Positions 2,385 to 23,813 of a stretch of 32,000 nt of DNA are shown piece by piece. The stretch spans positions 540,244 through 572,243 of the forward strand of contig NW_008806274.1 in NCBI RefSeq assembly GCF_000400465.1. Reading direction: 5' to 3'. The stretch's first letter is position 1. Each line of letters starts with the position of its first letter. The position numbers and the translations under genes are program-made. The notes beneath the pieces are model-generated. The model saw only the letters and a program-made list of their open reading frames with translations. It did no database searches and was not told where the DNA came from. This DNA is from Wallemia ichthyophaga EXF-994 (lineage: Eukaryota > Fungi > Basidiomycota).

Positions 2385-3962
2385 TTAGAGATGTGCCGTG
2401 GCAGTTGTGCGCCTATAGTAATCGGCTTTAATGAGATCGGATGCTCTTTCAGCTACCATTTCGACAGTGATCATAGGATTAGCGGTGACCATAGAGGGGA
2501 AGACAGAAGCGTCTACCACTCTAATACCTTTCATGCCCCTAATTCTGAGGAGAGGGTCTAAAACAGCGGATGGATCATTAGCTGCGCCCATTTTGCACGT
2601 ACCTGCTGGATGGTAGACGGTGTGGTGGACAGCTCTGCCGTATTTACCAATATCTTCATCGCTCTGCACGTGTGAACCAGGGGCAACTTCCTCTTTGAGC
2701 CACTTGGCGAACGGCTCCTGTTTAGCGATCTCCCTTGCAATTTTGATGCCGTCAATGATAGTCCGCTCATCTTGGCGAGCGGGGTCGGTGAAATAGCGAA
2801 AGTCGAGTGCGGGCTTGACGGAAGGATCGGCGCTAGTGAGGTAGAGTCTGCCGACCGACTTGGGTCTGCAGACATTAGGTGTCATGCATATAGCGTGCTC
2901 GGGGCGTGGGTAGCCGAGTCGCGCGGTGTTGTCAGCGAAAGGAACAGAATAGACGTGGAACATGAGATCTGGGCGTGTTTCGCCGTATTCTTTAACGCGC
3001 TGAATAAAGAGAGCCGCATCGGATTCCATTACTGTCTTGTCCTCGAGCGGCGCATGGAGCGACCACATGATGATGGACTCGGGATGGTCGAGCAGATTCT
3101 CACCGACTGGCAAATCAGCAGTAAGAGGAATGTTGAGGCGACGGAGCTGCTCAGCGGGACCAATGCCGTTGAGGAGGAGGAGTCTAGGTGAGTCGATAGC
3201 GCCAGCAGAAAGCAAAACCTCATGTCGACACCTGAAAGTGGTGCGTGACCCGCCTTCCGGTGTAGCTTCAACACCGACCACTCGATCCCCATCAAAGAGG
3301 AGCTTGTCGACCCACGAATTCAGCATGAGGTGCAAGTTAGGCCGTTTGTCCATGATAGGATGCATGTATGCGACTGAAGCCGACGACCGCTTCCCGTCGT
3401 GGGGTGTGTATGCAATGCTCAGCCAGCCCACACCCTCCGTCCACACCTTGGTGCCGTGCGAGTGGCGAGTCTGCGCCCAAGAGTCGAAGTTGTCGATCAC
3501 AGGCACGCTAGTGGCCCGTTGCGAGGCGTCTATCCAGTCGCCCATGATCGGGTTGCGGTCTTTGTGCGCCGGCGGCTGGATGTGATTGAGGAGGCGATCG
3601 CCGTACGCCTGCATCGTGTGGCTGTCCCATCCGCGCGCACCACGCTTCACCCACTCATCGAGATCTTGCGGAAAGGGGCGGAAACAGATGAGAGTGTTGT
3701 GGGAGCTGCACCCGCCGAGTACTTTGGCGCGTGAGTGCAGGATGTGCGAGTTGCCGTGTGGCTGCGCGACGGTCGGGTAGGCGTAGTCGAGCTCCCCGCC
3801 GAGCAGAGACAGCCAGGATCGCAGCTGGAGCACCTCCGGGTGGTTGCGGTCGTCGGGGCCGCCTTCGATCACGAGCACTGATATCTCTGGCACCTCGGTC
3901 AATCTGTTTGCCAGCACCAGCCCCGCTGTACCGCCGCCGATGATTATATAGTCGAATTCCAT
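2385..3962 (-). CDS. codA: Choline oxidase (GMC oxidoreductase, CodA type), intronless, about 525 aa; an alternative in-frame upstream ATG lies at 4037
   Basis: FAD-binding motif DYIIIGGGTAG; HSRAKVLGGCSSHN carries the His that covalently binds FAD in Arthrobacter choline oxidase; HTVYHPAGT carries the active-site His; C-terminal ANPMITV..AER; the protein ends in -AHL (PTS1 consensus). Confidence 0.85.
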   Translation of the reverse strand: MEFDYIIIGGGTAGLVLANRLTEVPEISVLVIEGGPDDRNHPEVLQLRSWLSLLGGELDYAYPTVAQPHGNSHILHSRAKVLGGCSSHNTLICFRPFPQDLDEWVKRGARGWDSHTMQAYGDRLLNHIQPPAHKDRNPIMGDWIDASQRATSVPVIDNFDSWAQTRHSHGTKVWTEGVGWLSIAYTPHDGKRSSASVAYMHPIMDKRPNLHLMLNSWVDKLLFDGDRVVGVEATPEGGSRTTFRCRHEVLLSAGAIDSPRLLLLNGIGPAEQLRRLNIPLTADLPVGENLLDHPESIIMWSLHAPLEDKTVMESDAALFIQRVKEYGETRPDLMFHVYSVPFADNTARLGYPRPEHAICMTPNVCRPKSVGRLYLTSADPSVKPALDFRYFTDPARQDERTIIDGIKIAREIAKQEPFAKWLKEEVAPGSHVQSDEDIGKYGRAVHHTVYHPAGTCKMGAANDPSAVLDPLLRIRGMKGIRVVDASVFPSMVTANPMITVEMVAERASDLIKADYYRRTTATAHL

Positions 3963-4043
3963 CTGCCTGTTTGATTTGAAAATTTTTGATTCGCCGTCGT
4001 CGTCGCCAGAAGAAAAGTTTACTATCTCATCTGTCATCAACTC
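3963..4043. promoter_or_regulatory. Putative ultra-short bidirectional promoter between codA and the ALDH
   Basis: Only 81 nt separate the divergent ATGs. The interval contains an AT-rich TGAAAATTTTT element at about 3977-3987 inside otherwise GC-rich DNA. Confidence 0.5.
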
Positions 4044-5608
4044 ATGGCGTCACCGAAATTATACACAACGATCCACGCGCTTAAGACAAAGATCGAGGTG
4101 CCGCTGGGGCTGTTTATCGACGGGGAGTTCAGGCGGGGAGGCGGTGCAGCCTTGTGAGTTGAAGTGGGTGGATAACGGCGATGTGCACGCTGACACGACG
4201 CAGCCACACGATAAACCCCGAGAACGAGCAGCCAGTGGTCGCAGATACCGTGCAAGCCGCGAGCAAGGCTGATGTCGATGCCGCAGTGAGCGCAGCCCGC
4301 CTAGCATACAACACGACATGGGGGCAGACAGTGGAAGGGAGTGAGCGATCGCGGCTAATGCGCAAGCTGGCCGACCTGATAGACCGTGATACATGCCTAC
4401 TCGCTGCGGTGGAAGCACTCGACGGCGGCAAGACGGTTACGTGGTGTGAGGGCGATATCGCCGACGCGTCTGCCTGTTTGCGCTACTATGCCGGTTGGGC
4501 TGACAAGATACACGGGCAGACACTCGAAGGACATGCGCCTACGAAGATGTCCTTCACCCTCCACGAGCCCGTCGGCGTCGTGGGGCAGATCGTACCGTTC
4601 AACTACCCGCTCATGATGGCAGGCTGGGCGATTGCGCCTGCGCTAGCAGTTGGCTGCTCTGTCGTATTCAAGCCGGCTGAGGCGACGCCGCTGTCCACGC
4701 TCCTCCTTGCGCAGCTGGTGCATGAGGCCGGCTTCCCAAAGGGTGTGTTCAACGTCGTCAACGGTAGCGGGCGCGAGACAGGCGCGGCGATTGCAGAGCA
4801 CCCCGATATCGACAAGGTATCTTTCACCGGTTCCACAGCTACTGGCCGCGGCATTGCCGTTGCTGCAGCGCGCTCCAATCTCAAGAAAGTGAGCTTGGAA
4901 CTTGGCGGAAAATCTCCCAGTCTCGTCTTTCCCTCTGCGGACATAGACGAGGCCGTCAAATGGAGTGCGTTTGGCGTGTTTGAAAACGCTGGACAAAGCT
5001 GCTCCGCCGGCACGCGTCTTCTCGTGCACGAAAGCGTATATGAGCAGTTCGTAAACAAGCTAGCACATGCGGCTGACGCGATAAAACTCGGCAGCGTACT
5101 CGATCGGTCCACGCAACAGGGACCACAGATCCACCGCGCACAGTTCGAAAAGGTCATGCAGTATATAGATATTGGTAAGGCAGAAGGTGCGCGCGTGGTT
5201 GCAGGTGGTACGCGTTACGGTGATACTGGCCTCTTTATCCGCCCGACCGTCTTTGCGGACGTACATAACGGCATGCGTATCGCGCAGGAGGAGATATTCG
5301 GACCCGTCGTTGTCGTGATTCCCTTCAAAAACGAAGACGAGGCGGTGGAAATGGCGAATGATACCTCTTACGGCCTCGCTGCGGCTATACACAGCAAGCA
5401 GGCAGATGAGGTGGGAAGGGTGATGCACCATCTCAAGGCGGGAACGGTTTGGGTTAATCAGTACACCATGCTCTCGCATAACACGCCTTTTGGTGGTTAT
5501 AAGCAGAGTGGGTGGGGCAGACAACTCGGCAGCTACGGACTCGACGCGTACATGAATGTGAAGGGCGTTAGCTGGAACTACGGCCCTGAGGCGGCGCCCA
5601 AGTTATGA
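4044..5608 (+). CDS. NAD(P)+ aldehyde dehydrogenase, probable betaine aldehyde dehydrogenase; exons 4044..4153, 4204..5608; 504 aa
   Basis: The true N-terminus MASPKLY..VPLGLFIDGEF is joined by intron 4154-4203 (GTGAGT..GCTGAC..CAG) to FHTINP. Motifs present: PFNYP, KPAEATP, FTGSTATG, LELGGKSP (catalytic Glu), AGQSCSAG (catalytic Cys), EEIFGPV. The protein ends in -PKL. ALDH family membership is certain; the betaine aldehyde substrate is inferred from adjacency to codA. Confidence 0.8.
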
Positions 5609-5751
5609 TGTGGTGGGTTTTCGAGTGGGCGATTTCGTAATTTTTGTAGTTTGTTTTGAATAGTGAGTAGTGAGTAGTGATTACTGTTTAGAGAGCAGCC
5701 TGTAGTATAAAAATCAAAGCGATAATTAGCAATACACTGTGTACCTGAATC

Positions 5752-5848
5752 AGGCACACTCGAGGCACCCTGAGTGTTGAGCGAGTGCCTTGAGTGCCTT
5801 AGTGCTGGGTGCCTTGCCAGCGACGCCTCCGCCTCAGCCTCAACACTC
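5752..5848. repeat. Cluster of direct and inverted AGGCAC/GTGCCT and GCCTC motifs
   Basis: AGGCAC at 5752 and 5763; GTGCCT at 5785, 5794 and 5809; GCCTC at 5825, 5831 and 5837; a perfect 10-bp inverted repeat GAGTGTTGAG (5772-5781) / CTCAACACTC (5839-5848). Confidence 0.7.
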
Positions 5849-5993
5849 TAACCAACCACCAAATATTCCCGCACGACCACCGATCACCTGCACCAAGCTG
5901 AAGCGACACCGCTAGCGAAGAGAGCAGGGCAACGTGAAAAAATAAATAATAAAACTAATTCGTAAGCAGCGCACACCCAACGCAACACGCACA

Positions 5994-6302
5994 ATGACGC
6001 TCACAGGCGGCAGTACAGGAGCAGGAGCAGGAGCAGGAATGGGTCCAGGGATGCCCATGGATAATAGCGTGCACGGAGACGGCCGCTGCAACGTCTACCC
6101 CCTCTCTACAGATAGATTGGAGTGCCTGCCATCACCATCAAATGCGCAGGTAGCGGTGGCTGTCGTGCTCGGTGGACTCGCCGTCGTGGCATACACCGCC
6201 GTCGTCGCAGCCTTGCTGCTCGTCCGCAGGAGGGCGAGACTGGGCGAGAAGGAGCGCGAGCAGGAGTGTGAGTGCAAAGGCGTGGACGGGATAGTGGGGT
6301 AG
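5994..6302 (+). CDS. Hypothetical small single-pass membrane protein (102 aa)
   Basis: An AT-rich tract lies upstream, the ATG context is ACAATG, and a 25-aa hydrophobic stretch VAVAVVLGGLAVVAYTAVVAALLLV is followed by RRRAR. I recognise no family. Confidence 0.4.
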   Translation: MTLTGGSTGAGAGAGMGPGMPMDNSVHGDGRCNVYPLSTDRLECLPSPSNAQVAVAVVLGGLAVVAYTAVVAALLLVRRRARLGEKEREQECECKGVDGIVG

Positions 6303-6407
6303 TATATTCCATCAACAAGCAAGCCATCAACCAAATCAACGCTATCTATCTATCTATATGATACAAACGAAACAGGAAGCAATCCACACACTCACACTGA
6401 CTCCCAC

Positions 6408-8150
6408 TTACTCCATCGCAGCAAGGCGATAATCCGCGAGGTTGTGATGTTGAGACGGGGAAGGCGATCCAAAGAGGCGATCGCGCCCATTGAGGGATTT
6501 CGGAAAGGCGATGGTGTCACGAATAGAGGTTGTATCGCACATGAGAGCGATGAGCCTGTCGAGCCCGAGCGCAATACCAGCGTGAGGGGGGGCACCACTA
6601 GCTAGGGCTTGTAGGAGGTGACTGAATCTACCCACCTCCTTCTCGCTCAGACGTAAGACGTCTCTAAAAACACTCTCTTGTAAATCCGCCTCATGAATAC
6701 GCACACTGCCCCCACCGATTTCGCACCCGTTGAGTACGAGGTCGTAGTGCTGGCCGCGCACGCGCTCTGGGTTTGTGTGGAGGAGGTGCACGTCGTCTGC
6801 ATGTGGTGCTGTGAAAGGATGGTGAGTGGAGGCGTAACGCCCACGTGAGAGATGTGCTTTATCCTCATCCGCACGCGTGAAGAGCGGGAACTCGGTGATC
6901 CACGTGAAAGCATAGGGTGTGGTGTGGGGGAGGGCGAGGTGATCTGCAAGCGCCAGACGCAGTGCTCCCAGTGCAGTTCCCCCACCGTCGGGATACACCG
7001 GCGTATCTTCACACCACACCACATCCCCCTCTTGCAGGCCGAGCGAGGCGACCATCTGTGGTGTGGGCGGAGTAGGAGGGTGAGCAGCGTAGAATTCTGC
7101 GCTCACTCGCGAGGCTGTCTCTTTGTCCAGCGTGAGTGCTCGCGTCTGCATTTGAGTTTGCTTTACGCCACCACTACCTACACACTCACCTCCACCCTCA
7201 GCCACGCCGCGTATGGCCAAATCGAATCGCAGGTCGGGCTTGTCGGAGCCGTAAGTGTTCATGGCGTGCGTGTAGGACATGACGGGTATGCTTGGAATGT
7301 GGGTGTGCATATACCGCGCCCACAACTCCCCCACTAGCCCTTGGATAAGCTGGCGGATCTGCTCACCACCGATATTCCACCCGCGCGCGCACGAGTCAGG
7401 CGAGGCAGCACCATTGACATAGGCCATTTCAACATCCAGCTGGGTAAACTCAGGCTGCCTATCCTTCCTGCCATCCTCATCACGGAAACACCTAGCAATC
7501 TGGAAATAGGCGTCAGTGCAGCCAGAAGCAATGAGGAGCTGCTTGGGTTGCTGGGGCGATTGGGAGAGCGCGTAGAAGGAGGGAGTGTCGGAGGAGCGTG
7601 TGGGGACGAGGAACTCCCGCGCGCCTTCGGAAGAAGAGTTGAGGAGGATCGGAGTTTCGATCTCGGTGAAGCTGAGGGAGTGGAGGTGGGTGCGGATAGA
7701 GTGGGTGATCTGAGACCGGCGCTGGAGAGTTTGGGTGAGGCGCGTGCTGCGCAGGTCGAGATAGCGGTGCTTCAGCTTGAGATCGACGTCGGAGGAGCAA
7801 GTGGGGGAGAGAGGATTGAAAGGGAGTGAGCGGGCCGCGTTGAGCATGTCGAGGCGGTGCACGTCGAGCTCGATGCTGCCTGTCCTCAAATTGGAATTGG
7901 ACGAGTCACGGAGCTTCACTTGGCCAGAAACCTGGATAACTGAGTTTGTCGTAGTGTTTGGTGGGATTAAAGTATTTGGTGTGATTAGCTGTATAACACC
8001 GCTGTGATCTCTCAAGTCGATGAAAGATTTCGCCTTGTTCAGCCGTCGAATCGAGATCAAATGGCCAGCGAGGTTTACAGTGCTATTGAGATCATCAACA
8101 CCAACTAAACCACACAATTTTGATCTTTTGAATAAATTAGAGAGTGTCAT
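6408..8150 (-). CDS. MSD1: Aspartyl-tRNA synthetase, mitochondrial/bacterial type, intronless, 580 aa
   Basis: OB-fold FIDLRDHSG; ETPIL..SSEGAREFLVP; LSQSPQQPKQLL; motif 2 YFQIARCFRDEDGRKDRQPEFTQLDVEM; HHPFTAP; YDLVLNGCEIGGGSVRIH; motif 3 GAPPHAGIALGLDRL. Confidence 0.93.
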   Translation of the reverse strand: MTLSNLFKRSKLCGLVGVDDLNSTVNLAGHLISIRRLNKAKSFIDLRDHSGVIQLITPNTLIPPNTTTNSVIQVSGQVKLRDSSNSNLRTGSIELDVHRLDMLNAARSLPFNPLSPTCSSDVDLKLKHRYLDLRSTRLTQTLQRRSQITHSIRTHLHSLSFTEIETPILLNSSSEGAREFLVPTRSSDTPSFYALSQSPQQPKQLLIASGCTDAYFQIARCFRDEDGRKDRQPEFTQLDVEMAYVNGAASPDSCARGWNIGGEQIRQLIQGLVGELWARYMHTHIPSIPVMSYTHAMNTYGSDKPDLRFDLAIRGVAEGGGECVGSGGVKQTQMQTRALTLDKETASRVSAEFYAAHPPTPPTPQMVASLGLQEGDVVWCEDTPVYPDGGGTALGALRLALADHLALPHTTPYAFTWITEFPLFTRADEDKAHLSRGRYASTHHPFTAPHADDVHLLHTNPERVRGQHYDLVLNGCEIGGGSVRIHEADLQESVFRDVLRLSEKEVGRFSHLLQALASGAPPHAGIALGLDRLIALMCDTTSIRDTIAFPKSLNGRDRLFGSPSPSQHHNLADYRLAAME

Positions 8151-19013: not shown

Positions 19014-20210
19014 ATGAGCAGACATCGCTATGTTAGAAATATGAATTTAGATGGTTAGTTATTCGAATTGCCAGTTTCATTCTTAATTTCAACCTCAAAG
19101 ACGAACTCGACGACGGTGGTTTCAGCGATGAGTACGATGACGACACTCAAGATCAAGTAGTTTATGGTGTGTACTGGGTTTATTTCGCTCACTCCTACTC
19201 ATCACACACGCTGCAGAAGGTATCACAGAAGATCAACTTGATCAATTATACGCTGGTTTAGACAGCATACGCGATTCTATCCCTGATTCTACCTCCTCTG
19301 ACCGTGAAGTCAAGGACGCCTTGTGGTACTTCTACTTTGATGTTGAGAAATCCCTTAATTGGATTCTCGGTACGTCATCATCCCCTATTCAAACGCATAC
19401 AGCGCTCAATTACTTGCAGAAGAATCCTCTAGACGCGCAGACGCTCAGCGCAAAAAGAAGGAGAAAGGTGAGCTCTCTTCCCTCCCACTCGACCCGCATC
19501 CGTCCAACTATCCTACTCTTCACCTAGATGAGGCGCCTCTGTCAGCACTTAAAAGGCTTGCGATTGCACGCCAGTCAAAGTCACAGCCATCGTCGTATCA
19601 GCGCCAGCACATTCTCTTCACTGGAAGAGGCAGGGCGCGTGTACCCCTGCCTTTTGATGTAGAGAAAGCTATCCATGTGAAACCTGATAGGAAGGTGTCT
19701 ATGGTTTCTGAAAATGTTGCCGAACAACAGCGATCGCCGACATCGCCTACTGCTCCTTCTAAACCTATGTCCAAGTTGGCGGCTATGGCAGCAACTAGAA
19801 GGCAGCAACAGCAACCGCAGCAGCCTCAGCAGCCATCCACACCTACAACCTCTAAACCACACTCGCACACCTCTGATGCATCCACCAAACCGCTCTCAAA
19901 ACTACAGTCAAAAGTCCTTCAAGCACGCGCAGCTCCTCCGCCAGACCAGCCACCACCACCGCCACGCGAGCTGACTCAGGCCGAGAAACTTTTCATAGAG
20001 CTCGACACTAATATAGAGAAGAACACTCCCTCTGAAATTGGCAACGTCATTATTAAAGCAACATCAAAACCCCATGAACATCACCTAGCCTCAGAGGCTA
20101 ATTTGTGGATATCTCAAAAAGGTGCATTCGACGGACCCAGTCCAGACGATGTTGTGCTTTTGGCTCGCAAAGGCACAGCCCTCGATAGTGCAGACAGAGG
20201 CTCTTCGTAG
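19014..20210 (+). CDS. SKI7: Predicted Ski7-like short isoform of the HBS1 locus; exons 1-4 plus 19528..20210; 329 aa, no GTPase domain
   Basis: The proximal acceptor CACCTAG at 19527 is in phase with the donor at 19468. The 683-nt open exon ends GAFDGPSPDDVVLLARKG..stop, resembling the exosome-binding PSPDD motif of Ski7/HBS1L short isoforms. Confidence 0.65.
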
Positions 20211-22073
20211 ACACCACATCTTTATTCCCTTACTATACCCTGTCCGACCCCCTTTATTACAATAAATATTAATAATACTCCAGAACAGAATCGCACATCC
20301 AAGCCAAACTCCAAGGCATCCACTCCCACCCCAGGCACACCTCGGAAAGAGTTTGCAAATCTCAGCAAAGATGTTAGCAATCTCAAAATCTCAGCCAACA
20401 GCACCCCGGCGCCATCGCGCCCATCAACACCACAGATTCAAGAATCGAAGAAGCTAATCCCGCGTCGAGAATTGGTAGAGAAAGTGCAGAAGACGCTCAC
20501 CAGCGACATAAGTCTGTGTGTAGTTGGGCATGTTGATGCAGGTAAATCAACTCTCCTGGGTCGACTGCTTGTCGAGCTTGGTGAAATGACAGACCGTGAA
20601 CACGAGAAAAATGCGCGTAATTCCGACAAACAAGGCAAATCTTCTTTCGCATATGCATGGGCAATGGACGATCTTGTAGAGGAGCGTGAACGAGGTGTGA
20701 CACTGGACTATGCTGTGACATCCCTGCGCACCAAGGACCGTTTACTGCATATAGTTGATACTCCAGGACATTCGCATCTTGTTCATAATATGATCTCCGG
20801 CGCGCAGCAAGCGGATGCTGCTCTGCTTATTATCGATGCTCGTCATGGCGAATTCGAGAAAGGGTTCTCGGAAAGAGGTCAGACTAGAGAGCATGCCCTG
20901 CTCGTGCGCAGCCTTGGTGTAAGGGAGCTTGGTGTGGTCGTCAATAAGATCGATGCGACAGGCTACTCACAGCAGCGGTTTGACTTCATCACAGACTCGC
21001 TTAGACCATTTCTTATCAAGAATGGTTTCAATAAGGATCGCATTCAGTTCGTTCCGTGTGCTGCTATGACAGGCGAGAATGTTACGAAACGGTCAAATGA
21101 GTCGCTTTGTGGGTGGTATAAGGGTCTTACTGTCGCTCAGGTTTTGGGTGAGTGTAGTTGTATACAGGTCTAGCCGCCCTATACTCATTGCTCACACATA
21201 CTCATTGCAGACCACCTTGAACCCCCTCAACGTCCCCTAGAAGCCGGGTTGCGTTTGCCTGTTCATAACATCTTCAAGGGCCAAACTGCAATAGCAAGTG
21301 GGGTAGGTGTCACTGGTAGATTGTGCGCTGGTGTGGTGCAGGTTGGTGAAAAGGTTAGATGCATGCCGGGAGACGAGCATGCTATTGTCAAAAGTAGGTT
21401 TGATTGAGTAGACGATTTCTTTCTAATGAACCAAAGTGATCGAGGTGGACGAGGAACCAGTGCCATACGCCGCTGCTGGTACCAATGTCACGCTGTATTT
21501 GGCGAATATTGATCCAATTCACCTGAGGTGGGTGCAAATCTTGCACAGCGTATTCCGCTCATTTGGCATAGTATTGGCTCTGTTCTTTGCTCACCAACCG
21601 ATCTTGTCCCACTAGCAACACGCTTTGTTGCACAGATTCTGCTCTTCGATACACACATCCCTATCCTACCAGGAACGACTGTGGGTAGCTATACTTGTTC
21701 CAATCCTCCTTAACACACCCCAAGTTTGAGATGTTCCTGCACTCAATCAACACTTCAGCCAGTGTGACCAAATTAATTGAAACAGTGGACAAAAATACAG
21801 GCGCTGTACTTAGATCCAAACCGAGGTTTGTTGCTTAGACATTTACTTCCTCTCCTAACACCCAGACTAAGGGTCCTCAGTGGAAATACAGCAGCACGTG
21901 TAGAAATGGCGGTTGGATCAAGCTCCCTCACATCGCAATCGGGCAGTGGAATGCCTTCTAGCAATCTCATTGCGATTGAAAAATTCAGCTCTAATAAGGA
22001 TATGGGTAGGATACTGCTCCGTCACGAAGGCGAGACAATAGCAGCTGGTATCATAATCGATCATATTCGTTAA
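19014..22073 (+). CDS. HBS1: Hbs1 translational GTPase (ribosome rescue); exons 19014..19053, 19101..19166, 19217..19369, 19420..19467, 20284..21147, 21211..21393, 21437..21527, 21572..21680, 21725..21825, 21866(or 21872)..22073; about 620 aa
   Basis: N-terminus MSRHRYVRNMNLD; HBS1_N segment VKDALWYFYFDVEKSLNWI; G1 GHVDAGKST, ERERGVT, G3 DTPGH, G4 NKID; EF1A-like domains II and III ending GRILLRHEGETIAAGII. All splice phases were checked. Confidence 0.9.
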
Positions 22074-22173
22074 AACTAATGGTCTATTCATGTAGATGTA
22101 TAAGATAGGCAGTTAAATACACAAAATCTGTTCTACTTTACGTGTATGGCTCAAGCTAATAAGTCTAGACAGT

Positions 22174-23813
22174 TCAGTCGTATACATCGACGTAGTGCTC
22201 TTCGTTGACGGTGCAGCTGCAATCTTTAGGTTTCTTGCCATTGAAGAATCCCATGGAGTGCTTTTCCATACAACCCATTGTGTCTGGTATGGCAATGCCA
22301 GGGGTAGCGGTGTGACCGTAACCATTCTTGATTGTGAGCAGTCCAGCGTTCTTCTTGCCGACCAAGTCTTGGAATTGGTGAGCCTGCTCAAGTGGCAGGA
22401 TTGGATCGTAAACGTTGGCAACCAGCAAGAACTTGTTAGCAAAGTCGATGCCGCTGAAGTCGGTCAAGCGAGGCTGGTCGAATGTGCCATTGGGGTATAA
22501 TTGACACGTGAAGCCTGATTGGTATAAGTATTGGCTGTAGAAGCGCTGAGTAACTTCGTTGTAGGTGTCTTTCATTGCATTTATAGCATCGTCTACTGTG
22601 AAATCTTCTATCTGGACATCAGCGCAGTTAATAGCTTTGATTGCATCGCCTCTCGAGCTGCTAATGCCACCTTTAGGGCCATATGGAGATGGTAAAAGCG
22701 AGGCAGCCTGCTTGATTCTGCTGAATGCTGTCCCCCATGTTGGTGGTACGTAGAGTGCGCTGTAGATATCTTCAACTGCACTCGTACGAGTTGAGTAGAT
22801 AGAGTTGATAACCGGATCATTGTTGTCGTACGCCATTGCAGTAAGCGCGTCAATGTACTCCTTGGTGATACCCTGAAATGGACATTCTTCCGTCTGTTGG
22901 CAACTCTCTACCATCTTGTCAAACACGCTATCGGTCGATGTCAAGTATGACGGGATAGCATCGAGGGTATCAGTGTTTGCTCTGACGCTTGGAGACATGA
23001 TTCCATTGAGGAGGAATTTGCCGACGCGATTGGGGTGTTTCACTGCAATACCCAAACCCAAGAACGAACCATAACTTTCTGCGAACAAGTCAACAGGCGT
23101 GTTAGATGCCTCGACCAGCTTATCGAAAACGTATACCATGTCATCTGCCGAGAAGTATGTACCGAGATAGGCAATGTGGGGAGTGTTGTCAACACATGAC
23201 TGCATATATTCCCTTTCCGCGTCGTAATAGTTTTGAAGTTGTGTGCGGAAGAGTGGAGTGGTTGTTTCGTCGAGCTTTGGTGGTACATCTGGGAAATTGT
23301 TTCTGGGGCCAGAGTCACTAGTGTTGCACATGACCTTGAGACCTGATTCCCCAGATCCACGTGGATCGACGCCGACCAAGATATAATCATTTGGCACGAG
23401 CTTATACAATAAGTCAGCAGATGCTTCAATTCCGCTGGTTCCAGAGCTAGCTGATGCTATGGCGGGTCCTCCAGCGTTGAAAAGTACGTGTCTTGACTTG
23501 AGTGCATTTTCGTTGCTCTTGTTCCAAACTTTCTTTACGTAGAGCCCGAACGTTCCAATTGATGGGTCATCGTGGTCAATAGGAGTGCTGGTGAGTGTGA
23601 GCGGTTTTGACAAAGGATATTCAAGACACACTCTATAGTTGCACATTGTGCATTGTATTTGTCATTAGTTGAACAGTCTTGCCAGTTAATTGAATAATCA
23701 CGAGCCTATCAAGGTTTTGTTAGCTTGAAGTCTCACTGCAATATTAAAGCAACACTCACCAGCGCAACGGTTGTTCCCATAAGAAAGAGTGCGAGTTGAA
23801 GTAAGTGGACCAT
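22174..23813 (-). CDS. Secreted alpha/beta hydrolase (TAP-like, peptidase S33-related); exons 23813..23760, 23705..23632, 23587..22174; 513 aa
   Basis: Signal peptide MVHLLQLALFLMGTTVAL; W.DC..CATIDTPIDH; LFNAGGP; GVDPRGSGES; nucleophile elbow AESYGS; LLVANVYDPILP (Asp); GYGH (His). Confidence 0.85.

What the first reader, a model, noticed from the sequence alone, without database searches (positions are those of the whole stretch)
19468..20283. One locus, two quality-control proteins: Hbs1 versus a truncated Ski7-like isoform via alternative 3' splice sites
The phase-1 donor at 19468 (GTGAGC) can join two in-phase acceptors. The proximal one, CACCTAG|19528, gives a 683-nt exon ending AFDGPSPDDVVLLARKG..stop at 20210 (329 aa, no GTPase). 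The distal one, ACTCCAG|20284, skips that exon and runs in frame into the complete GTPase with catalytic DTPGH. HBS1/SKI7 dual coding by alternative splicing, and an exosome-binding PSPDD motif in the short human HBS1L isoform, are established. The notable point is that this fungal locus appears to make a GTPase-less adaptor. Naive annotation would call an orphan ORF or a broken HBS1. A weak phase-1 donor at 20188 (GTGCAG) could additionally give a long Ski7-plus-GTPase form.
Basis: partly seen in the sequence, partly recalled or inferred. Interest (0 to 1): 0.72.

Follow-up and report, generated by a model that had tools for sequence, protein, structure and literature searches.

The report
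One gene encoding Hbs1 and Ski7
A fungal (Wallemia-like) gene can be spliced two ways, giving either the ribosome-rescue GTPase Hbs1 or a short GTPase-less Ski7-like exosome adaptor; this layout was already described for other basidiomycetes and for humans, so it is a good re-annotation, not a new mechanism.

Summary
Donor 19468 (phase 1) fits two phase-1 acceptors, at 19528 and 20284. The proximal one opens a 683-nt coding exon that ends at TAG 20208-20210 and gives 329 aa. The distal one gives a complete 620-aa Hbs1.

Four related Wallemia loci keep the donor, both acceptors and a stop directly after ...ADRG(xS). The alternative exon is under purifying selection (dN/dS 0.145). It carries the Patch-4/S3 motif (AFDGPSPDDVV) and a degenerate SKI7-like motif. 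No in-frame ATG lies before the P-loop, so Hbs1 needs the skip.

A better candidate at 20122 would delete the conserved motif and is also not universal.

No RNA data could be found, so isoform use is inferred.

Marshall et al. 2013 already proposed exon skipping plus a truncated, GTPase-less Ski7 in Cryptococcus and Ustilago. Human HBS1L isoform 3 is the established equivalent.

Verdict: interpretation supported; a new member of a known kind. Its main value is correcting inconsistent public Wallemia gene models. Interest 0.3.

The parts
19014..19053 (+). Exon 1 (start codon, MSRHRYVRNMNLD), common to all isoforms
   Evidence: donor GTTAGT; the same exon is found in L005, L003 and L001.
19101..19166 (+). 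Exon 2, acidic N-terminus, common
19217..19369 (+). Exon 3, core of the HBS1_N domain, common. Relatives carry an extra intron inside it.
   Evidence: Pfam HBS1_N at residues 18-91, E 9.5e-13; extra intron seen.
19420..19467 (+). Exon 4, the last common exon. It ends AGAAAG in phase 1. The shared donor GTGAGC starts at 19468.
   Evidence: The donor AGAAAG|GTRAGY is conserved in all five Wallemia loci.
19468..19527 (+). Proximal intron (60 nt), ending CACCTAG
   Evidence: The orthologous introns are 61, 60 and 58 nt. In two species retention would shift the frame, so this is a true intron.
19528..20210 (+). Alternative Ski7-like coding exon (227 codons plus stop TAG 20208-20210)
   Evidence: dN/dS 0.145 against L005. 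Homologs found. The stop directly after ADRG(xS) is kept in L005, L003, L001 and L004.
20025..20054 (+). Degenerate SKI7-like motif (TPSEIGNVII). It aligns with GPSLFGNIL and TPSPFASSL of other basidiomycetes and with RPSAFASTL of human HBS1L isoform 3.
20124..20183 (+). Patch-4-like / S3 motif (AFDGPSPDDVVLLARKGTAL), the best conserved block of the exon
   Evidence: Invariant or near-invariant columns P-S-P-D-D..A-R..G-T.L. Aligned to FDFKSASPDDIV of PDB chain 9g8m_E. Consensus taken from PMC6143672.
20211..20283 (+). 73-nt spacer between the stop and the distal acceptor. It holds two conserved islands: ATACCC (20235) and TATTAAT (20267, branch-point-like, overlapping AATAAA at 20261).
   Evidence: Alignment of five loci; coordinates. 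TTAAT/CTAAT/CTCAT-type branch motifs can be read 8-15 nt upstream of the other acceptors of this gene.
20284..21147 (+). First Hbs1-specific exon: Ser/Pro/Lys-rich linker plus the G domain (P-loop 20526, DTPGH 20757, NKID 20943)
   Evidence: There is no in-frame ATG between 20211 and the P-loop.
21211..22074 (+). Remaining Hbs1 exons (21211-21393, 21437-21527, 21572-21680, 21725-21825, 21866-22074 including the stop): domains II and III
   Evidence: Pfam GTP_EFTU_D2 and GTP-eEF1A_C. Boundaries conserved in L005 and L001.

Best explanation
The window carries the single HBS1/SKI7 gene of a Wallemia-like basidiomycete. Four short exons (19014-19467) encode the shared N-terminal HBS1_N domain. The donor after 19467 can be joined to either of two acceptors.

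(a) The proximal acceptor at 19528 adds a 227-codon exon that holds the Ski7-specific motifs and closes at TAG 20208. The product is a 329-aa protein with no GTPase. By analogy with human HBS1L isoform 3 and with the N-terminal part of yeast Ski7, it would bridge the Ski2-Ski3-Ski8 complex and the cytoplasmic exosome.

(b) The distal acceptor at 20284 removes an 816-nt intron, about 13 times the usual intron length here. The product is a 620-aa Hbs1, which with Dom34/Pelota rescues stalled ribosomes.

What is shown: the sites, their phases, the coding constraint, conservation of the stop, the motif content, and the lack of an independent start codon for the GTPase.

What is inferred: that both junctions are used in vivo, in what ratio, where the short mRNA ends, and the binding partners.
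For: - Coordinates and phases.
- Domains: HBS1_N, GTP_EFTU, D2 and eEF1A_C.
- Orthologous, syntenic loci from four other Wallemia genomes keep the donor, both acceptors in phase 1 and a stop right after ADRG(xS). The stop codon itself varies (TAG or TAA).
- The proximal intron is 58 or 61 nt in two species, so only splicing puts the exon in frame.
- dN/dS is 0.145 for the alternative exon against 0.045 for the G-domain exon.
- Nineteen and then 59 homologs carry the alternative region. Most are annotated basidiomycete proteins of 310-490 aa with HBS1_N only. None has a GTPase Pfam hit, and all end 3-35 residues after SPDD.
- Adjacent locus tags for a short gene and a GTPase gene occur in Microbotryomycetes JL201 and JL221 and in Thecaphora. 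Short-gene and GTPase-gene models are also called side by side at the Sporobolomyces and Naganishia loci.
- Rhizoctonia solani has both a 338-aa short model and a 632-aa skip model, in different assemblies.
- A profile of the alternative region hits the human HBS1L isoform chain 9g8m_E, aligned on both motifs.
- No in-frame ATG lies between 20211 and the P-loop.
- Literature: PMC3597508 (ESTs for skipping, and the truncated Ski7 proposal in C. neoformans and U. maydis) and PMC5389692 (human HBS1LV3).
Against: - There is no RNA evidence for this species or any Wallemia. Every related contig recovered was genomic.
- The 816-nt intron is very long for a genome whose introns in this gene are 40-63 nt.
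- A decent phase-1 donor at 20122 (AAG|GTGCAT, PWM 8.2) exists in four of five Wallemia loci. One public W. mellicola model uses its equivalent to fuse the exon to the GTPase.
- The SKI7-like motif has lost its phenylalanine in Wallemia.
- The PDB profile hit is marginal (E 0.15).
Confidence: 0.78

Rival explanations
1. The second product is a long Ski7-like protein that keeps the GTPase, as in Lachancea kluyveri. A further intron from 20122 or 20188 to 20283 removes the stop, and the 329-aa form is only an unspliced by-product.
For: - Both donors are phase 1 and fit the distal acceptor.
- 20122 scores 8.2, inside the real-donor range, and is present in four of five loci.
- Gene predictors produced an 818-aa W. 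mellicola model and an 896-aa W. hederae model of this type.
- In Saccharomycotina, Ski7 keeps the GTPase (PMC3597508).
Against: - 20188 scores -0.7, below all 34 real donors, and is GTC or GAT in three relatives.
- Using 20122 would delete the most conserved block of the exon (AFDGPSPDD...). It rests on a synonymous Gly codon position that is GGC in L003.
- The W. hederae model uses yet another donor, which is absent from the window, and it retains two introns.
- The sequence from the motif to the stop is conserved as protein, and the stop position is kept with different stop codons.
- None of the 59 homologs carrying the alternative region has a GTPase domain.
- Marshall et al. found the equivalent annotated introns unsupported by ESTs or RNA-seq (Text S1).
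Confidence: 0.12
2. There are two separate genes, as most public annotations have it: a short HBS1_N-plus-Ski7-like gene, and an independent GTPase-only gene with its own promoter and start. No 816-nt intron is ever removed.
For: - W. mellicola models of 496-519 aa start at an internal Met after the distal acceptor.
- Several basidiomycete annotations split the locus into two adjacent genes.
Against: - The window has no in-frame ATG between the stop and the P-loop. The first Met lies after the P-loop.
- The W. mellicola Met is not conserved in the window.
- The distal acceptor, its branch-point-like TATTAAT and its phase match to the exon-4 donor are conserved in all five loci.
- Full-length skip-type Hbs1 proteins (HBS1_N plus GTPase, 620-660 aa) are annotated in many basidiomycetes, including R. 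solani and C. neoformans.
- ESTs show skipping in C. neoformans and U. maydis (PMC3597508).
Confidence: 0.06
3. The 19528-20210 open frame is a chance ORF inside one long intron, and only Hbs1 is made.
For: Fungal genes rarely use alternative exons. The W. ichthyophaga transcriptome study reports only one exon-skipping event genome-wide (PMC3849046).
Against: - dN/dS is 0.145 over 226 codons.
- Amino-acid identity to other Wallemia is 61-81%, with motifs conserved across Basidiomycota and matching human HBS1L isoform 3.
- The chance of such an open frame is about 2e-5.
Confidence: 0.02

Closest known systems
SKI7/HBS1 of Cryptococcus neoformans and Ustilago maydis (Marshall et al. 2013, PMC3597508)
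   Same: Single basidiomycete locus. Hbs1 is made by skipping the Ski7-specific exon or exons. The proposed Ski7-like product is truncated and GTPase-less, ending at a stop shortly after motif S3. The donor that would bridge to the GTPase is poor or unsupported.
   Different: A different class (Wallemiomycetes). Here there is one alternative exon reached by a proximal acceptor of the same intron. No EST or RNA-seq support is available for this locus.
Human HBS1L isoform 3 (HBS1LV3 / SKI7; PMC5389692; PDB 9g8m chain E)
   Same: Shares the N-terminal exons with Hbs1. An alternative exon carries an RxxxFxxxL-type motif and then PFDFxxxSPDDIV close to the C-terminus. [quoted passage not shown]
   Different: The human alternative exon is much longer and is a terminal exon with its own poly(A) site. 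In Wallemia the first motif lacks Phe (PSEIGNVI). Sequence similarity is confined to the two motifs (profile E 0.15).
Alternative 3' splice sites of SKI7/HBS1 in Lachancea kluyveri, Aspergillus nidulans and Saitoella complicata (PMC3597508)
   Same: One donor with two 3' splice sites. The proximal site adds the Ski7-specific segment that includes motif S3.
   Different: In L. kluyveri the added segment reads through into the GTPase, giving a long Ski7. Here it ends in a conserved stop.
Saccharomyces cerevisiae SKI7 and HBS1 paralogs
   Same: The same two functions. The N-terminal part of Ski7 alone supports exosome-mediated decay (Text S1 of PMC3597508).
   Different: Two genes that arose by whole-genome duplication, with no alternative splicing. 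Ski7 retains a GTPase-like domain.
Plant HBS1/SKI7 with a cassette exon (Arabidopsis At5g10630; PMC6143672)
   Same: One locus, with a SKI7-like motif and a Patch-4-like motif (PFKFDxPSPDDhV).
   Different: In plants only the SKI7-like motif is in the cassette exon, and both isoforms keep the GTPase.

Membership tests
Dual-coding HBS1/SKI7 locus | One gene with an HBS1_N domain and an eEF1A-like translational GTPase (G domain, domains II and III) | tested here: met
   Pfam: HBS1_N 9.5e-13, GTP_EFTU 3.5e-44, GTP_EFTU_D2, GTP-eEF1A_C 1.2e-20.
Dual-coding HBS1/SKI7 locus | A shared donor with two in-phase acceptors, or a skippable exon, that brackets a Ski7-specific segment | tested here: met
   Donor at 19468, acceptors at 19528 and 20284, all phase 1. 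Conserved in four related loci.
Dual-coding HBS1/SKI7 locus | Patch-4-like / S3 motif (PFxFxxPSPDDxV) in the alternative segment | tested here: met
   AFDGPSPDDVVLLARKGTAL at 20124-20183. These are the most conserved columns of alignments A1 and A3. Aligned to FDFKSASPDDIV of 9g8m_E.
Dual-coding HBS1/SKI7 locus | SKI7-like motif (RxxxFxxxL; metazoan consensus A+PShFAahL) | tested here: inconclusive
   TPSEIGNVII aligns with GPSLFGNIL and TPSPFASSL of other basidiomycetes and, through the profile, with RPSAFASTL of the human protein. However, Phe is Ile, Leu or Val in all Wallemia, and the preceding basic residue is missing.
Dual-coding HBS1/SKI7 locus | Both mRNA isoforms are actually produced | not testable with these tools
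   No transcript-derived contig of Wallemia was found in three protein searches and twelve contig look-ups.
Truncated GTPase-less Ski7 (human HBS1L isoform 3 / basidiomycete type) | The reading frame closes a few residues after the Patch-4 motif, and the stop is conserved | tested here: met
   The stop lies 8 codons after ...GTAL. It sits at ADRG(xS)* in five Wallemia loci, with TAG or TAA. In the other basidiomycete models the stop lies 3-35 residues after the motif.
Truncated GTPase-less Ski7 (human HBS1L isoform 3 / basidiomycete type) | No functional donor between the motif and the stop that would join the exon to the GTPase | tested here: met
   The only GTs there are 20188 (PWM -0.7) and 20207 (-4.0, wrong phase), against 3.6 to 12.8 for real donors. 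Neither is conserved.
Truncated GTPase-less Ski7 (human HBS1L isoform 3 / basidiomycete type) | Binds the exosome and the Ski2-Ski3-Ski8 complex | not testable with these tools
   Needs co-immunoprecipitation or complementation.
Hbs1 translational GTPase | Intact G1, G3 and G4 motifs | tested here: met
   GHVDAGKS (20526), DTPGH (20757) and NKID (20943).

The most novel reading that the evidence does not exclude
In Wallemia the choice between Ski7-like and Hbs1 products may be set by a competition inside the 73-nt spacer. The conserved ATACCC and AATAAA/TATTAAT elements (20235-20273) could serve two roles at once: as the cleavage/polyadenylation signal of the short mRNA, and as the branch point of the distal acceptor. 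Then 3'-end formation and removal of the 816-nt intron would exclude each other.

If no poly(A) site is used there, the short protein would instead be translated from an mRNA with a ~1.6-kb exon-junction-rich 3' UTR. That would place an RNA-decay adaptor under nonsense-mediated-decay control.
Probability: 0.15. Interest if true: 0.5.

Novelty: new member of a known kind. Interest (0 to 1): 0.3.

Why it matters
The finding gives a consistent gene model for a locus that is mis-annotated in all Wallemia models seen here. Those models are GTPase-only, or chimeric long forms built on three different ad hoc introns.

It also adds a fourth basidiomycete lineage (Wallemiomycetes) to the 2013 proposal that basidiomycetes make a human-like, GTPase-less Ski7 from the HBS1 gene.

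The wider survey points the same way. Short HBS1_N-only models appear in Cantharellales, Tremellomycetes, Microbotryomycetes and Ustilaginomycotina. The same stop-before-distal-acceptor layout appears in three more distant fungal contigs. Together these suggest the truncated form is the common fungal state rather than an oddity.

It does not reveal a new mechanism.

Tried and rejected
1. Idea: the frequent ...RK* ending of basidiomycete short forms reflects a stop embedded in a GTAAGT/GTGAGT donor, which would imply a real intron. Rejected. The DNA reads AAA TGA in Rhizoctonia and Sporobolomyces, with no GT there. Only Naganishia has AAG TGA.

2. Rejected by the PWM score and by its lack of conservation.

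3. A direct phmmer search of the alternative exon against PDB sequences gave nothing relevant. Only the profile reached human HBS1L isoform 3, and weakly.

4. A search for transcript-derived contigs to prove the junctions. All Wallemia contigs are genomic. Three candidate short-isoform contigs (L009-L011) still contain the proximal intron in frame, so they say nothing about splicing.

5. Retention of the proximal intron as a third in-frame isoform. This is possible in the window (60 nt, no stop) but not conserved, because the intron is 61 and 58 nt in L005 and L001.

6. Scans of the window for tRNAs, Rfam families and tandem repeats found nothing relevant.
Full report
**1. What is in the sequence**

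The + strand between 19014 and 22074 holds one intron-rich gene.

- Four short exons (19014-19053, 19101-19166, 19217-19369, 19420-19467) encode an HBS1_N domain (Pfam E 9.5e-13).
- Exon 4 ends AGAAAG|GTGAGC in phase 1.
- Two acceptors fit that phase: CACCTAG|19528 and ACTCCAG|20284.
- From 19528 an open frame of 227 codons runs to TAG 20208-20210. With the four common exons this gives 329 aa.
- From 20284 the frame runs through a Ser/Pro/Lys-rich linker into a complete eEF1A-like GTPase, with GHVDAGKS at 20526, DTPGH at 20757 and NKID at 20943. Five more short introns follow, up to the stop at 22072-22074. This form is 620 aa.

Introns in this gene are 40-63 nt, so the skip intron (19468-20283, 816 nt) is exceptional.

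**2. Source organism**

The nearest named proteins are from Wallemia mellicola (79-80% identity over the G-domain exon) and W. hederae. The window's G+C content is 47.5%. That value and the ~60-nt introns resemble the published W. ichthyophaga genome (45.35% GC, mean intron 61 bp; PMC3849046). I therefore treat the window as a Wallemia-like (Wallemiomycetes) genome. I did not determine the species.

**3. Comparative test within Wallemia**

Four orthologous genomic loci were recovered. All are syntenic, with Ssu72 upstream on the minus strand and an alpha/beta hydrolase and a chitin synthase downstream.

- L005 is the closest (81% amino-acid identity in the alternative exon).
- L003 is about W. 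hederae.
- L001/L002 and L004 are about W. mellicola.

All of them keep the following:

- the donor AGAAAG|GTRAGY;
- the proximal acceptor, with protein conservation starting exactly there (DEAPLSALK+LAIARQ);
- a stop directly after ...ADRG, ...ADRGSS or ...ADRGAS, written as TAG or TAA;
- the distal acceptor in phase 1.

The proximal intron is 60, 61, 60 and 58 nt. In two species only splicing puts the alternative exon in frame.

Window against L005 gives dN/dS = 0.145 over 226 codons for the alternative exon, and 0.045 for the G-domain exon. The alternative exon is therefore a real coding exon under purifying selection.

The stretch between the stop and the distal acceptor is 73 nt here and about 79-101 nt in the relatives. 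It is otherwise diverged. In two relatives it contains further in-frame stops, which rules out conserved readthrough. It keeps two conserved islands: ATACCC (20235), and TATTAAT (20267), whose TTAAT core ends about 10 nt before the AG. TATTAAT matches the yTnAy branch motifs visible upstream of the other acceptors of this gene.

**4. Does a long, GTPase-bearing Ski7 form exist?**

I built a 9-position donor matrix from 34 constitutive donors of this gene in four species. Real donors score 3.6 to 12.8. These are self-scored, so the values are slightly generous.

It is replaced by GTC or GAT codons in L001, L004 and L003.
- A better phase-1 candidate is AAG|GTGCAT at 20122, which scores 8.2. It is present in four of five loci. 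It would excise the most conserved block of the exon, and it depends on a synonymous Gly codon position that is GGC in L003.

Public gene models confirm that the locus confuses predictors:

- Most W. mellicola models, including that of the reference strain CBS 633.66, are GTPase-only (496-519 aa) and start at a Met that the window lacks.
- One strain has an 818-aa model that uses the equivalent of 20122.
- W. hederae has an 896-aa model that uses a G|GTGCCT donor absent from the window and retains two introns.

Three different solutions in three annotations argue that none reflects a conserved intron.

**5. Must Hbs1 skip the exon?**

Yes, for three reasons.

- There is no in-frame ATG between the stop (20210) and the P-loop (20526). 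The first Met lies after the P-loop. The GTPase can therefore only be translated as a continuation of upstream exons.
- The only conserved in-phase route is 19467^20284.
- Full-length HBS1_N-plus-GTPase proteins of 620-660 aa with this junction type are annotated in many basidiomycetes, including Rhizoctonia solani and C. neoformans. In R. solani the genomic locus shows the same layout: short form, stop, about 120 nt, then the acceptor of the skip form.

**6. Breadth of the short form**

A search with the 329-aa form found 19 proteins. A profile of the alternative region found 59.

Apart from Wallemia ORF fragments, the named hits are annotated proteins of about 310-490 aa with HBS1_N as their only Pfam domain. 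They come from Rhizoctonia, Ceratobasidium, Hydnum, Thecaphora, Naganishia, Cryptotrichosporon, Sporobolomyces, Rhodotorula and unnamed Microbotryomycetes. None of the 59 has a GTPase domain.

They share the blocks PLSALQRL, KPxSKLAA, KPLSKLQxK, PSxF(G/A)xxL and (F)xxPSPDDxVxxAR+GTxL. They end 3-35 residues after the last block.

In several assemblies a GTPase-only model sits directly next to the short model: adjacent locus tags in Microbotryomycetes JL201 and JL221 and in Thecaphora, and neighbouring called genes at the Sporobolomyces and Naganishia loci.

I tested whether the common ...RK* ending hides a donor that contains the stop. It does not.

**7. Link to characterised proteins**

The alternative exon alone finds nothing in the PDB. 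The profile of the region hits human 'Isoform 2 of HBS1-like protein' (9g8m chain E, the SKI7 chain of the human exosome structures) at E 0.15. This is the second-best match of 177,635 sequences. It aligns collinearly on PSxFAS (the RxxxFxxxL motif) and on FxxPSPDDxV.

These are the two motifs that define SKI7 proteins in animals and plants (PMC6143672). In the human protein the first motif is the main exosome contact and the second is minor (PMC5389692). In Wallemia the first motif has lost its Phe (PSEIGNVI), so that criterion is only partly met.

**8. Comparison with what is known**

Marshall et al. 2013 (PMC3597508) showed by ESTs that C. neoformans and U. maydis skip the Ski7-specific exons to make Hbs1. 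They argued from four observations that basidiomycetes make a truncated Ski7-like protein without the GTPase, 'strikingly similar' to the third human HBS1L isoform:

- poor splice sites;
- no EST or RNA-seq support for the annotated intron;
- amino-acid conservation running up to a stop;
- similarity to motif S3.

The present locus matches that description point for point in a further class of Basidiomycota. It is therefore a new member of a known kind.

**9. What remains open**

No RNA evidence could be obtained. All recovered contigs are genomic.

It is unknown whether the short mRNA ends in the 73-nt spacer or carries the whole downstream gene as its 3' UTR. The spacer contains AATAAA at 20261 and the conserved ATACCC. 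In more distant fungal contigs the spacer is only about 27-50 nt (L010, L012, L013), which leaves little room for a separate poly(A) site there. This favours the simple alternative-3'-splice-site reading, at least in those species.

The ratio of the two products, any control by nonsense-mediated decay, and the binding partners are all inferred.

**10. Verdict**

The extra long form through 20188 is not supported. Novelty is low: a new member of a known kind. The practical value is a corrected gene model for Wallemia. Interest is 0.3.

Noticed in passing
window 2385-8150: This block has 57-59% G+C against about 45% elsewhere. It holds three long uninterrupted ORFs: a GMC oxidoreductase (2385-4040, minus strand), an aldehyde dehydrogenase (4181-5608, plus strand) and a bacterial-type, presumably mitochondrial, aspartyl-tRNA synthetase (6408-8150, minus strand). 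The divergently placed oxidoreductase and dehydrogenase pair resembles choline dehydrogenase plus betaine-aldehyde dehydrogenase, but both score below the NCBIfam equivalog cut-offs. Glycine-betaine synthesis would be of interest in a xerophilic or halophilic fungus. The origin of the island was not examined.
   Followed up: partly
window 19217-19369 versus L005 2690-2760, L003 1320-1385, L001 5700-5780: Exon 3 of the gene is continuous in the window. In all three relatives it is split by an extra short intron after ...ITEDQL. This is an intron loss in the window's lineage.
   Followed up: no
L012 3283-3340 and L013 2983-3040 (unnamed Logan contigs), and L010 2771-2810: More distant fungal loci show the same layout. 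Their alternative region carries a human-like PFDFxxPSPDDVV motif. The Ski7-like ORF closes 27-50 nt before the branch point and acceptor of the Hbs1-type exon. In L012 and L013 the downstream exon is in a different frame. If these contigs are ascomycetes, the GTPase-less form may be the general fungal state and not a basidiomycete peculiarity. Their taxon was not established, and the upstream donor phases were not checked.
   Followed up: partly
window 20235-20240 and 20261-20273: Two sequence islands are invariant among five Wallemia loci inside otherwise diverged non-coding DNA between the Ski7-like stop and the distal acceptor. TATTAAT looks like the branch point. ATACCC has no obvious role and may be a 3'-end or splicing-regulatory signal.
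   Followed up: partly
public proteins P0021, P0022, P0141, P0142 and P0166 (W. mellicola, W. hederae): Public Wallemia annotations of this gene disagree with each other. There are GTPase-only models (496-519 aa, including reference strain CBS 633.66), one 818-aa fusion that lacks the SPDD motif, and one 896-aa fusion with retained introns. None represents either product proposed here.
   Followed up: yes
window 22075-22173: Only about 100 nt separate the stop of the HBS1 gene from the stop of the convergent hydrolase gene (22174-23646, minus strand). 3' UTRs in this genome must therefore be very short or overlapping.
   Followed up: no
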